NCBI RefSeq assembly: GCF_001194135.2
Contig: NC_068995.1
Span: 38,259,572 to 38,301,124 of the forward strand
DNA length: 41,553 bases
Reading direction: 5' to 3'
Source of the DNA: Octopus bimaculoides
Lineage: Eukaryota
Under the pieces are notes generated by a model. That model saw only the letters and a list, made by a program, of their open reading frames with translations. It was not told where the DNA came from and made no database searches. This document shows positions 34,040 through 35,206 of the stretch, piece after piece. The stretch's first letter is position 1; every line of letters begins with the position of its first letter. The position numbers were made by a program, and so were the translations under genes.

Positions 34040-35206
34040 TCATTGAGAATAAAGTATGGCAAAAGTCAAAGTTATTGTCATAAATATTGTGGTTGACAGA
34101 ACAAAAAAGAATCTGTCTAGTTTTTCCCATCGTGTCATTCCATTCACAGAGATGTTGCCCTCTTTTAATGATGATATTCTTTGTAAGGAATATTTTGTGT
34201 TCTGAGTAATTATTTTCGATTCGTTCTCTGTTATTGCTGCTGGTATTGGACTAATTTTCGAAGTTGTACTCGGTACATTCTGATAAATATAGGCTCTACT
34301 TAGCAAAATCGAACTAATGCATGAAAATCCTCCCATGATTGTCAGCCCCATTAGGTACAACAGGAACAAACACATTTTCTCTTCTTCATTTGATAGTAAG
34401 CTAGTATTGTCGATTAAATAAACCATATTAGAAAGAAAAACAGTTGTTGAAAATGTTACTTTTTCTCCTGCAGATGCTGGTAAGAAAAACGCACATGTTA
34501 TTAAAATCGTCAGCATGATCGGCGGTAAAATGATAATTAATCTGCTAATAACAGCTGTGCGAGTTAACCGTATTGATAAAGTTGCGTATTCTTGATCATT
34601 GTATGTTATCGGCGGTTCAGTACTCGTGTGAATATGCCATCCTTCCATATTTTTTACTGGATCCGTTCGAAGTGATTTAATCAGTGTTAAGTTGTTCATT
34701 TGATAAGGTAGGCATATATACGTGGGGCAATTTTGTACGTCAAACGGATATCGAGAATTGTCAACGCCACAGAATAGTTGGTATGTATAAAACGATTCTT
34801 CTTCTACTACTCCATTCTGCCATACCGTAACCTGACGTTCATAACGATGATTGCCAATGAGTTTGATAGCATTACATATGTAAACATTTGGTGTCCATAT
34901 TTTAGTCTTAGGTAAAATGATACTTTCTGCGTTTCCATATTCCGTTTTGTTCCAGAAAAGATATTCATCTTCCCAGCGCAGTATAATATATACTTCTCCA
35001 ACGAGTATTCCTTTAAATGCATTGAAATCATAAAGTCTATTTAGAGATGCATGTACATCAATAAATACACTTGTATTTATATTTCGTACAGGTCTCGTAT
35101 ATTTATTGTAATCTTTTAGCAAATCCTTCTGTAACATTACTTCTTCGTTACATGCTTCTGCTAGCACAAGGACGGTTGGTAGAAATAAAAAGTATTTAGC
35201 ATACAT
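34040..35206 (-). CDS. Single-exon Cys-loop ligand-gated cation channel subunit, atypical nAChR-like / cephalopod chemotactile receptor (CR) family
   Basis: 388 aa uninterrupted. Signal peptide ~1-18; LLKDYNKYTRPV; W78-E-D; W104-T-P-N; Cys-loop C146-GVDNSRYPFDVQN-C160; pre-M1 R216; M1 ~223-243; G247-E-K then M2 with 9' L258; M3 ~279-303; W360-EKLDR then M4 366-386. No vicinal CC in loop C (YNDQEY). Confidence 0.93.
   Translation of the reverse strand: MYAKYFLFLPTVLVLAEACNEEVMLQKDLLKDYNKYTRPVRNINTSVFIDVHASLNRLYDFNAFKGILVGEVYIILRWEDEYLFWNKTEYGNAESIILPKTKIWTPNVYICNAIKLIGNHRYERQVTVWQNGVVEEESFYTYQLFCGVDNSRYPFDVQNCPTYICLPYQMNNLTLIKSLRTDPVKNMEGWHIHTSTEPPITYNDQEYATLSIRLTRTAVISRLIIILPPIMLTILITCAFFLPASAGEKVTFSTTVFLSNMVYLIDNTSLLSNEEEKMCLFLLYLMGLTIMGGFSCISSILLSRAYIYQNVPSTTSKISPIPAAITENESKIITQNTKYSLQRISSLKEGNISVNGMTRWEKLDRFFFVLSTTIFMTITLTFAILYSQ

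What the first reader, a model, noticed from the sequence alone, without database searches (positions are those of the whole stretch)
34040..35206. Intronless nAChR-derived channel with a dismantled acetylcholine site: candidate chemotactile ('taste by touch') receptor
Seen in sequence: complete 388-aa pLGIC subunit in one exon, intact Cys-loop, cation-type GEK, short M3-M4 loop (~55 aa), no loop-C CC. Established: coleoid cephalopods have an expanded, largely intronless family of atypical nAChR-like genes expressed in suckers (Albertin et al. 2015). These were shown to be ACh-insensitive chemotactile receptors for poorly soluble compounds such as terpenoids (van Giesen et al. 2020). Inference: this ORF is a family member, possibly one with no known ligand. 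I cannot tell which paralog it is.
Basis: partly seen in the sequence, partly recalled or inferred. Interest (0 to 1): 0.9.

Follow-up and report, generated by a model that had tools for sequence, protein, structure and literature searches.

The report
Divergent octopus chemotactile-receptor family gene
This is an intact, single-exon gene for a nicotinic-receptor-like ion channel subunit of the cephalopod "taste by touch" chemotactile receptor family; the family is already known, but this copy is a very divergent, conserved lineage with a more polar predicted ligand pocket and no known ligand.

Summary
Window 34040..35206 (-) is one uninterrupted 388-aa ORF encoding a complete Cys-loop channel subunit. 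It has a signal peptide, a C146-x13-C160 Cys-loop, four TM helices, GEK at the pore mouth, a 9' Leu and a ~49-aa disordered M3-M4 loop. Loop C has no vicinal Cys pair.

The family assignment is supported.
- Its best solved-structure matches by sequence and by fold are octopus CRT1 and squid CRB1, well ahead of any nAChR.
- NJ trees place it with CRT1 and CRB1 in a clade whose labelled members are all cephalopod (98-100% of bootstraps).
- It shares a Cys pair specific to that clade (C111/C165).
- Its relatives in three Octopus genomes are also single-exon.
- The ACh aromatic box is gone: TyrA to Cys, TrpB to Pro, TyrC1 to Asp, TyrC2 deleted.

A 76%-identical positional ortholog in another sequencing project gives dN/dS 0.39 (TM 0.20), so the gene is under constraint. 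Other relatives are at most 34% identical, and five of seven CRT1 ligand-contact positions differ, several to polar or acidic residues.

Sucker expression, ACh insensitivity and the ligand remain untested. Verdict: a new, divergent member of a known kind; moderate interest.

The parts
34040..35206 (-). Complete single-exon CDS (388 codons plus TGA stop at 34040-34042) of a CR-family pentameric channel subunit
35153..35206 (-). Predicted signal peptide, aa 1-18 (MYAKYFLFLPTVLVLAEA). Inferred from hydrophobicity and from alignment with family N-termini.
   Evidence: inference
34547..35152 (-). Extracellular ligand-binding domain, aa 19-220 (N-terminal helix plus beta-sandwich)
   Evidence: Pfam PF02931; AlphaFold secondary structure
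34874..34876 (-). C111, at the loop A position that holds TyrA in nAChRs. It is one half of the Cys pair specific to the CR clade.
34727..34771 (-). Cys-loop C146...C160 (CGVDNSRYPFDVQNC)
34712..34714 (-). C165 (Cys-loop +5). It covaries perfectly with C111 across the clade, so a disulfide is inferred.
34706..34708 (-). P167, at the position of TrpB (W in 61 of 106 non-clade relatives)
34571..34630 (-). Loop C, aa 193-212. It is short, has no vicinal Cys, and is the most divergent ECD segment between the orthologs (10/20 differences). It contains D204 and Q205, which align with CRT1 L191 and F192.
34280..34546 (-). M1-M2-M3 transmembrane helices, aa 221-309
34460..34468 (-). G247-E248-K249, the cation-type intermediate ring (-1' Glu) at the cytoplasmic mouth of M2
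34133..34279 (-). Short intracellular M3-M4 loop, aa 310-358, predicted disordered
34043..34132 (-). M4 helix and C-terminus, aa 359-388
35207..35616 (-). Upstream block about 69% identical to the ortholog contig L001. It includes a TATAAA at 35567-35572 (-366 from the ATG; -363 in L001). Candidate promoter and 5'UTR.

Best explanation
The ORF is a functional gene for a subunit of the cephalopod chemotactile receptor (CR) family. This is the intronless, nAChR-derived clade whose studied members (octopus CRT1 and CR840, squid CRB1) are ACh-insensitive cation channels in sucker sensory cells.

Shown here:
- It has a complete Cys-loop channel architecture.
- Its closest sequence and fold relatives are CRT1 and CRB1.
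- It sits inside the cephalopod CR clade and has a single-exon coding sequence.
- Purifying selection acts on it across two species.

Inferred mechanism:
- Five subunits, alone or with other CRs, assemble into a pentamer.
- A small molecule met on contact binds at the subunit interface formed by loops A-F, and loop C closes over it.
- The movement passes through the Cys-loop (YPFD) and the pre-M1 Arg to open the 9' Leu gate.
- Cations pass through a pore ringed by the -1' Glu (GEK) and depolarise the sensory cell.

ACh cannot be the ligand, because TyrA, TrpB, TyrC1, TyrC2 and the vicinal Cys pair are all absent.

The inner pocket residues (Y73, E137, F139, Y168) are conserved between the orthologs, whereas loops C and F diverge fast. 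Five of seven CRT1 contact positions differ, including E137 and D204. The ligand is therefore probably not CRT1's terpenoid or steroid set. It may be more polar or cationic.
For: Sequence and fold:
- PDB phmmer gives CRT1 160 bits and CRB1 146 bits, against 88 bits or less for any nAChR.
- Foldseek with the AlphaFold model (pLDDT 78) gives 8eis_A TM 0.87 and 8eiz_A TM 0.81, against about 0.6 for alpha7.

Phylogeny:
- WIN (this window's protein) and its ortholog P0001 pair in 100% of NJ bootstraps.
- WIN falls in a clade of 22 taxa or fewer with CRT1 and CRB1 in 98-100% of replicates.
- The exact 18-member clade gets 60-69% support, and it holds after adding 61 bivalve and gastropod domains.
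- All labelled members of that clade are Octopus or are the cephalopod CR structures in the PDB. The nearest outgroups are bivalve and gastropod.
- An HMM built from the clade without WIN scores WIN at 303.7 bits, against 265.2 bits for the non-clade HMM.

Shared derived characters:
- The C111/C165 pair is present in 13 of 18 clade members and absent as a pair in all 167 non-clade sequences or domains. It was lost only jointly.
- Relatives are single-exon in O. bimaculoides, O. sinensis and O. vulgaris.

Constraint:
- The ortholog contig L001 aligns through both flanks. dS is 0.34 and dN/dS is 0.39, which is below 1 with Fisher p 1e-8. For M1-M3, dN/dS is 0.20.
- The split between a conserved inner pocket and variable loops C and F matches the pattern published for CRs.

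Family properties come from the literature.
Against: - There are no expression data and no electrophysiology.
- The exact protein is not in the 15-billion-protein collection, so no annotation supports it.
- The Pfam TM-domain score is below threshold.
- Branching inside the CR clade is unresolved, and ECD-only trees give weaker support (65%). Only NJ could be run, not ML.
- The hydrophobic pocket described as a common CR property is not obviously kept here (S54, E137, D204, Q205).
- The M2-M3 linker lacks the Pro found in several relatives.
- No canonical poly(A) signal occurs within 800 nt of the stop.
Confidence: 0.72

Rival explanations
1. It is a true CR-clade gene but not a ligand-sensing chemotactile receptor by itself. 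It could be an obligate accessory or modulatory subunit that only works in heteromers. It could also be a CR-derived channel used in a non-sucker tissue for another purpose.
For: CR subunits are reported to combine into many multimeric complexes. Only a few CRs express well alone. This lineage is at most 34% identical to all others, and its pocket departs from the hydrophobic CR consensus.
Against: Inner pocket residues and loops A and E are among the most conserved ECD parts between the orthologs (0-10% divergence). That pattern suggests a ligand site under constraint rather than a passive structural subunit.
Confidence: 0.18
2. It is an unexpressed or decaying retrocopy, that is, a pseudogene that happens still to be open.
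For: The gene is intronless and stands alone among microsatellites and assembly gaps. It is not in the protein collection, and no canonical AATAAA or ATTAAA follows it.
Against: Both orthologs keep full-length frames at dS 0.34. dN/dS is 0.39 overall and 0.20 in the TM helices (Fisher p 1e-8). The chance of an open frame this long is about 2e-13. An upstream block with a TATAAA is conserved at the same offset in both species. Being intronless is the norm for this family.
Confidence: 0.05
3. It is a canonical ACh-gated nAChR non-alpha (complementary-face) subunit.
For: It has general nAChR homology and a cation-type GEK pore. A Tyr sits at the loop D TrpD position.
Against: It clusters with CRT1 and CRB1, not with alpha-type or other nAChR-like sequences. 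Its ICD of about 49 aa is short, whereas aligned alpha-type comparators have far longer M3-M4 loops. The CDS is single-exon. It carries the clade-specific Cys pair.
Confidence: 0.03

Closest known systems
Octopus bimaculoides CRT1 (chemotactile receptor for terpenes 1; PDB 8EIS, 9E6B; UniProt A0A0L8FVQ9)
   Same: It is the best PDB match by sequence (E 5e-46, full length) and by fold (TM 0.87, rmsd 2.6 A). The two proteins are the same length class. Both have a short ICD, GEK, a 9' Leu, no loop C CC, and the C111/C165-equivalent Cys pair. TyrA and TrpB are lost in both, and Y58 and F124 are conserved as Y73 and F139.
   Different: Identity is only about 29%. Five of seven ligand-contact positions differ: Y39 to S54, W122 to E137, L153 to Y168, L191 to D204, F192 to Q205. 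The vestibule residue E104 is N119. The ligand is unknown.
Squid CRB1 (bitter-sensing chemotactile receptor; PDB 8EIZ)
   Same: It is the second-best sequence match (E 1e-41) and fold match (TM 0.81). It lies in the same cephalopod clade and its M2 is near-identical (GEKVTFATTVFLSN against GEKVTFSTTVFLSN).
   Different: Identity is about 28%. CRB1 and its closest relatives lack the Cys pair (Tyr/Tyr instead) and keep a Trp at the CRT1 W122 position.
P0001, an unnamed 387-aa protein on Logan contig SRR11869391_1859223 (L001)
   Same: It is 76% identical over the full length and also single-exon. Its flanks align at about 70%, so it is a positional ortholog. The pocket core, M1-M3 and the Cys pair are identical.
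   Different: It has a one-codon deletion. Loops C and F and the ICD differ at 40-50% of positions. K249 is R. The source species is unknown.
Canonical nicotinic acetylcholine receptors (e.g. human alpha7, alpha4beta2)
   Same: They share the pentameric Cys-loop fold, the YPFD/FPFD Cys-loop, the pre-M1 Arg, the GEK cation filter, and the 9' Leu and 13' Val gate.
   Different: The aromatic box and vicinal Cys are absent, loop C is about 6 residues shorter, and the ICD is about 49 aa against a much longer one. The CDS is intronless. Similarity is lower (88 bits or less; TM about 0.6).
Molluscan 'CR-like' and expanded nAChR-like proteins (bivalves, gastropods); annelid Alpo4
   Same: These are divergent lophotrochozoan nAChR-like subunits that lack ACh-binding motifs and have unknown ligands.
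   Different: In the NJ trees they fall outside the 18-member cephalopod clade, and none has the Cys pair.

Membership tests
Cys-loop / pentameric ligand-gated ion channel superfamily | N-terminal beta-sandwich ligand-binding domain with a 13-residue-spaced Cys-loop, followed by four TM helices | tested here: met
   PF02931 E 1.4e-29. C146-x13-C160. The AlphaFold model has helices at 220-239, 247-268, 280-309 and 359-387. There are 1107 Foldseek PDB hits at E<=0.001, and all top-50 hits are pLGICs.
Cephalopod chemotactile receptors (CRs) | Phylogenetic placement in the cephalopod clade that contains the functionally defined CRs (CRT1, CRB1), apart from canonical nAChRs and from non-cephalopod CR-like sequences | tested here: met
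   In NJ bootstraps WIN joins CRT1 and CRB1 in a clade of 22 taxa or fewer in 98-100% of replicates. The exact 18-member clade gets 60-69%. The clade HMM beats the non-clade HMM by 38 bits. Caveats: only NJ was run, the ECD alone gives 65%, and the full CR catalogue was not available.
Cephalopod chemotactile receptors (CRs) | Loss of the acetylcholine-binding aromatic box and of the loop C vicinal cysteines | tested here: met
   TyrA to C111, TrpB to P167, TyrC1 to D204, TyrC2 deleted, no CC, TrpD to Y73.
Cephalopod chemotactile receptors (CRs) | Intronless coding sequence (attributed to retroposition) | tested here: met
   One ORF runs from the signal peptide to M4, with an upstream in-frame stop. 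The ortholog and four Octopus relatives are also single-exon. The family trait is stated. UTR introns cannot be excluded.
Cephalopod chemotactile receptors (CRs) | Non-selective cation channel pore | tested here: inconclusive
   The sequence motifs fit: -1' Glu (GEK), 9' Leu, 13' Val, and an M2 near-identical to that of CRB1. Permeation itself was not measurable here.
Cephalopod chemotactile receptors (CRs) | Relatively flat, hydrophobic orthosteric pocket suited to poorly soluble ligands | tested here: inconclusive
   Y73 and F139 are retained. The other five CRT1 contact positions are S54, E137, Y168, D204 and Q205. Model coordinates could not be accessed to measure pocket shape or polarity.
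Cephalopod chemotactile receptors (CRs) | Paired Cys at the TyrA position and at Cys-loop +5. This clade signature was found here and is not taken from the literature. | tested here: met
   C111 and C165 are present. The pair occurs in 13 of 18 clade members, is lost only jointly in the other 5, and occurs in none of 167 non-clade sequences or domains.
Cephalopod chemotactile receptors (CRs) | Expression in sucker (or hectocotylus) chemosensory cells | not testable with these tools
   No expression data are available. The family trait is stated.
Cephalopod chemotactile receptors (CRs) | Insensitive to ACh; gated by terpenoids, bitter compounds, steroids or microbial metabolites | not testable with these tools
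   This needs electrophysiology. The family trait is stated.
Canonical ACh-gated nAChR subunits | Conserved agonist-site aromatic residues (alpha: plus loop C Cys-Cys), a long M3-M4 domain, and clustering with alpha or beta clades | tested here: not met
Non-cephalopod molluscan 'CR-like' clade | Grouping with gastropod, bivalve or chiton sequences | tested here: not met
   Bivalve and gastropod proteins and their split domains stay outside the 18-member clade.

The most novel reading that the evidence does not exclude
The window gene and its ortholog may found a deep-branching CR subfamily that is missing from the annotated protein sets held in the collection searched here. In this subfamily the orthosteric pocket would have been rebuilt again: the hydrophobic residues of CRT1 are replaced by conserved acidic and polar ones (E137, Y168, S54, with D204/Q205 in loop C). 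That would tune it to a different chemical class, such as cationic or polar contact cues, rather than terpenoids or steroids. The C111-C165 pair would be a structural disulfide that replaces the TyrA-TrpB core of the ancestral ACh site.
Probability: 0.25. Interest if true: 0.55.

Novelty: new member of a known kind. Interest (0 to 1): 0.35.

Why it matters
Chemotactile receptors are a recent and well-studied case of a neurotransmitter receptor turned into an environmental chemosensor. Of the 26 reported O. bimaculoides CRs, the papers read here name ligands for only CRT1 and CR840.

This copy is intact and under constraint, yet it is at most 34% identical to its paralogs and has a differently charged predicted pocket. 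That makes it a reasonable candidate for widening the known ligand space of the family. It could also test the published idea that a conserved inner pocket combined with fast-evolving outer loops tunes specificity.

It does not reveal a new kind of system. If it is already among the 26 O. bimaculoides or 235 catalogued cephalopod CRs, it is simply an orphan member awaiting deorphanisation.

Tried and rejected
- A profile search with the word-indexed protein search added nothing beyond the single-sequence search.
- A search with a transposon-like ORF to identify the species found nothing.
- Pfam on seven other long ORFs of the window found nothing. Rfam found nothing.
- A species test compared window repeats with O. 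bimaculoides, O. sinensis and O. vulgaris loci. It gave only old SINE-like hits at 65-79% identity and was inconclusive. Only the N-gap style resembles the O. bimaculoides assembly.
- The primary CR papers (van Giesen 2020, Allard 2023, Kang 2023, Allard 2023 primer, Albertin 2015) are not held. Family traits are therefore cited from a review and from later preprints.
- No supplements with CR sequences are held.
- No paper prints peptides of this protein or the run accession SRR11869391.
- Model coordinates are not exposed. The C111-C165 distance and the pocket electrostatics could not be measured.
- Chance ORF, pseudogene and canonical non-alpha nAChR were each considered and rejected.

Full report
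**1. The observation**

The ORF listing reports a 388-aa ORF at exactly 34040..35206 on the minus strand, running from ATG to TGA. An in-frame TAA lies 15 nt upstream of the ATG, so the frame cannot extend further 5'. The window is AT-rich (about 33% GC), eukaryote-like DNA. It is full of microsatellites and has 11 runs of N. At this composition a 388-codon open frame has P about 2e-13, and about 2e-8 are expected in the whole window. The next-longest ORFs free of N runs are repeat translations or have no family match.

Pfam finds Neur_chan_LBD (E 1.4e-29) and a sub-threshold Neur_chan_memb match.

- a Cys-loop, C146-x13-C160, containing YPFD;
- G247-E248-K249 ahead of M2, with L258 at 9' and V262 at 13';
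- a short loop C without vicinal cysteines;
- an M3-M4 loop of about 49 residues that AlphaFold leaves disordered.

tblastn finds no second copy in the window.

**2. What it is**

By sequence, the best solved structures are octopus CRT1 (8EIS/9E6B, E 5e-46, 160 bits, aligned end to end) and squid CRB1 (8EIZ, 1e-41). The best canonical nAChR reaches only 8e-24 and 88 bits.

An AlphaFold2 model has mean pLDDT 78 and pTM 0.64. Searched against the PDB, it returns 8eis_A (TM 0.87, rmsd 2.6 A) and 8eiz_A (TM 0.81) first, followed by alpha7 and muscle nAChRs at about 0.6.

An exhaustive HMMER search of 1.84 billion representatives finds one close relative, P0001 (76% identity, 387 aa). Everything else is at most 34% identical. 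Named hits in the near neighbourhood are Octopus bimaculoides, O. sinensis and O. vulgaris proteins with automatic names such as 'acetylcholine receptor subunit alpha-like 2', 'beta-3' and 'unc-29-like'. The higher-scoring multi-domain hits and the nearest outgroups are bivalve and gastropod proteins.

I aligned 124 single-domain proteins, adding the CRT1 and CRB1 sequences taken from the PDB alignments, and built NJ trees with bootstraps. "WIN" below is the protein encoded in this window.
- WIN and P0001 pair in 100% of replicates.
- WIN lies in a clade of 22 taxa or fewer with both CRT1 and CRB1 in 99-100% of replicates. The figures are 65% for the ECD alone and 81% for the TMD alone.
- The exact 18-member clade has 60-65% support.
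- Adding 61 domains cut from bivalve and gastropod multi-domain proteins leaves the clade intact (69%) and the association at 98%.
- Branching among the four subgroups inside the clade is unresolved.
- An HMM built from the clade without WIN or P0001 scores WIN at 303.7 bits, against 265.2 bits for the HMM of the other 106 sequences.

Two further family traits are met.
- The relatives P0010, P0011, P0018 and P0036 are single-exon genes in the NCBI assemblies of three Octopus species. Some lie in tandem or in clusters. A 2026 preprint describes intronless structure as characteristic of CRs.
- WIN carries Cys at the position of nAChR TyrA (C111) and at Cys-loop +5 (C165). In the clade, 13 of 18 members have both and 5 have neither, which implies at least three independent joint losses. 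None of the 106 plus 61 non-clade sequences has the pair. I infer a disulfide between loops A and B. I could not measure it, because model coordinates are not exposed.

**3. The ACh site**

I compared WIN with alpha-type sequences that keep the loop C Cys-Cys. One of them, P0113, is an echinoderm protein named alpha-10-like.
- TyrA is C111 and TrpB is P167.
- TyrC1 aligns with D204.
- The Cys-Cys and TyrC2 fall in a 6-residue deletion.
- TrpD is Y73.

ACh gating through a classical cation-pi box is therefore excluded on sequence grounds.

**4. Is it a live gene?**

P0001 sits on a 1.8-kb Logan contig (run SRR11869391) that ends in microsatellites, so it is genomic DNA. The contig aligns with the window through about 400 nt upstream (69% identity) and about 100 nt downstream (71%). 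This makes it a positional ortholog, and it is also uninterrupted.

Nei-Gojobori estimates:
- overall: dS 0.34, dN 0.13, dN/dS 0.39 (Fisher p 1e-8 against neutrality);
- by region: dN/dS 0.20 for M1-M3, 0.38 for the ECD, 0.57 for the ICD.

Amino-acid divergence between the orthologs:
- 7-8% in M1-M3;
- 0% in loop A and 10% in loop E;
- 40% in loop F and 50% in loop C.

This is the pattern published for CRs, a conserved inner pocket with a diversifying outer pocket. A TATAAA lies at -366 in the window and at -363 in the ortholog, inside the conserved upstream block. The exact protein is not on record in the protein and gene collection.

**5. Pocket chemistry**

The CRT1 ligand-contact residues reported in two preprints are Y39, Y58, W122, F124, L153, L191 and F192. 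They map to S54, Y73, E137, F139, Y168, D204 and Q205. The mapping is the same in the multiple alignment and in a pairwise alignment. S54, Y73, E137, F139, Y168 and Q205 are identical in the ortholog, and D204 is Gly there. The pocket is thus predicted to be less hydrophobic and more acidic than that of CRT1, which argues for a different ligand class. This is inference from alignment only.

**6. Mechanism**

Shown here are the architecture, the family placement and the constraint. The mechanism itself is inferred from established pLGIC mechanics and from the CR literature:
- pentamer assembly, homomeric or with other CRs;
- binding of a non-ACh small molecule at the loop A-F interface;
- coupling through the Cys-loop and the pre-M1 Arg to the 9' Leu gate;
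- cation influx through a pore with a -1' Glu ring;
- depolarisation of sucker chemosensory cells.

**7. Comparison, novelty and caveats**

The gene works like CRT1 and CRB1 and passes every membership feature I could test. Expression and pharmacology are untestable here, and pocket hydrophobicity is inconclusive.

The family is established. It has 26 members reported in O. bimaculoides, 6 in a squid, and 235 catalogued in about 30 cephalopods. A separate 'CR-like' clade is reported in other molluscs. This is therefore a new, or at least unlabelled, member of a known kind.

I could not determine the species. The N-gap style resembles the O. bimaculoides assembly, but the repeat comparison was inconclusive. 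I also could not determine whether this gene is one of the already counted CRs, because the primary papers and sequence supplements are not held.

Interest is moderate. Still, the deep divergence, the clear constraint and the altered pocket make it a sensible deorphanisation target.

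Noticed in passing
window 34874-34876 and 34712-34714 (C111, C165); alignment: Within the cephalopod CR clade, a Cys at the TyrA position and a Cys five residues after the Cys-loop are either both present (13 sequences) or both absent (5 sequences, at least three independent losses). The pair is never seen outside the clade. This suggests a clade-specific disulfide between loops A and B at the back of the former ACh pocket.
   Followed up: partly
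window 35207-35616 (-), TATAAA at 35567-35572; L001 100-503: About 400 nt upstream of the ATG is conserved at about 69% with the ortholog contig. A TATAAA sits at nearly the same offset in both (-366 and -363). Two conserved pyrimidine-rich ...YAG motifs lie upstream of the ATG, at about -113 (...TTTGCAG, window about 35325-35319) and at -44 (...TTTGTAG, 35255-35249); they could be 5'UTR splice acceptors. This is a candidate promoter and 5'UTR, and a UTR intron is not excluded.
   Followed up: partly
window 33240-34039 (-): No canonical AATAAA or ATTAAA occurs within 800 nt downstream of the stop codon, despite the AT-rich sequence. The 3' end of the transcript is undefined.
   Followed up: no
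window 33635-33741, about 33870-33940, about 35600-35745; L001 ends: The gene is bracketed on both sides by (TA)n and (CA/GT)n microsatellites, and the ortholog contig breaks off in the same kinds of repeat. Assembly gaps (runs of N) lie at 32698-32874 and 36400-36557. There are 11 N runs (1887 nt) in the window.
   Followed up: partly
window 1-34039 and 35207-41553; L004, L002/L005: The gene is solitary in this 41.5-kb window. By contrast, relatives occur as tandem duplicates 9.7 kb apart in O. vulgaris (L004). Two relatives lie about 90 kb apart on one O. bimaculoides chromosome (P0011 and P0010 on CM046615.1).
   Followed up: partly
window 28009-28982 (+), tandem repeat 28148-28544: About 100 copies of a TCTG tetranucleotide, plus related repeats at 27783-27917, create long spurious ORFs rich in S, L, C and Y (up to 298 aa). 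These are not genes.
   Followed up: yes
window about 37000-39000: A segment with 44% GC, against about 32% elsewhere, carries ORFs of 124 aa (37792-38166, +) and 183 aa (38411-38962, -). Neither has a Pfam match. It may be a transposon remnant or an unrelated exon.
   Followed up: partly
window 829-1329 (-) and 17940-18413 (-): These ORFs look like reverse-transcriptase or LINE remnants on reading (e.g. 'YKDDIII'). They gave no Pfam hit, and the one that was searched gave no homolog, so this is unverified.
   Followed up: partly
window 2082-2255, 4291-4456, 24957-25386: Short interspersed repeats here are 65-79% identical to copies near CR genes in O. bimaculoides (L005) and O. sinensis (L003). 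This fits an octopod genome but is too old to identify the species.
   Followed up: partly
window 13409-13551: A 17-bp minisatellite (GAATGTGTTAGTGTTAA) is present in 8.4 copies with 98% matches.
   Followed up: no
P0030 cluster: A 77-member cluster of CR/nAChR-like proteins comes largely from JGI/IMG 'metagenome' contigs. Animal, probably molluscan, DNA is therefore present in some environmental assemblies.
   Followed up: no
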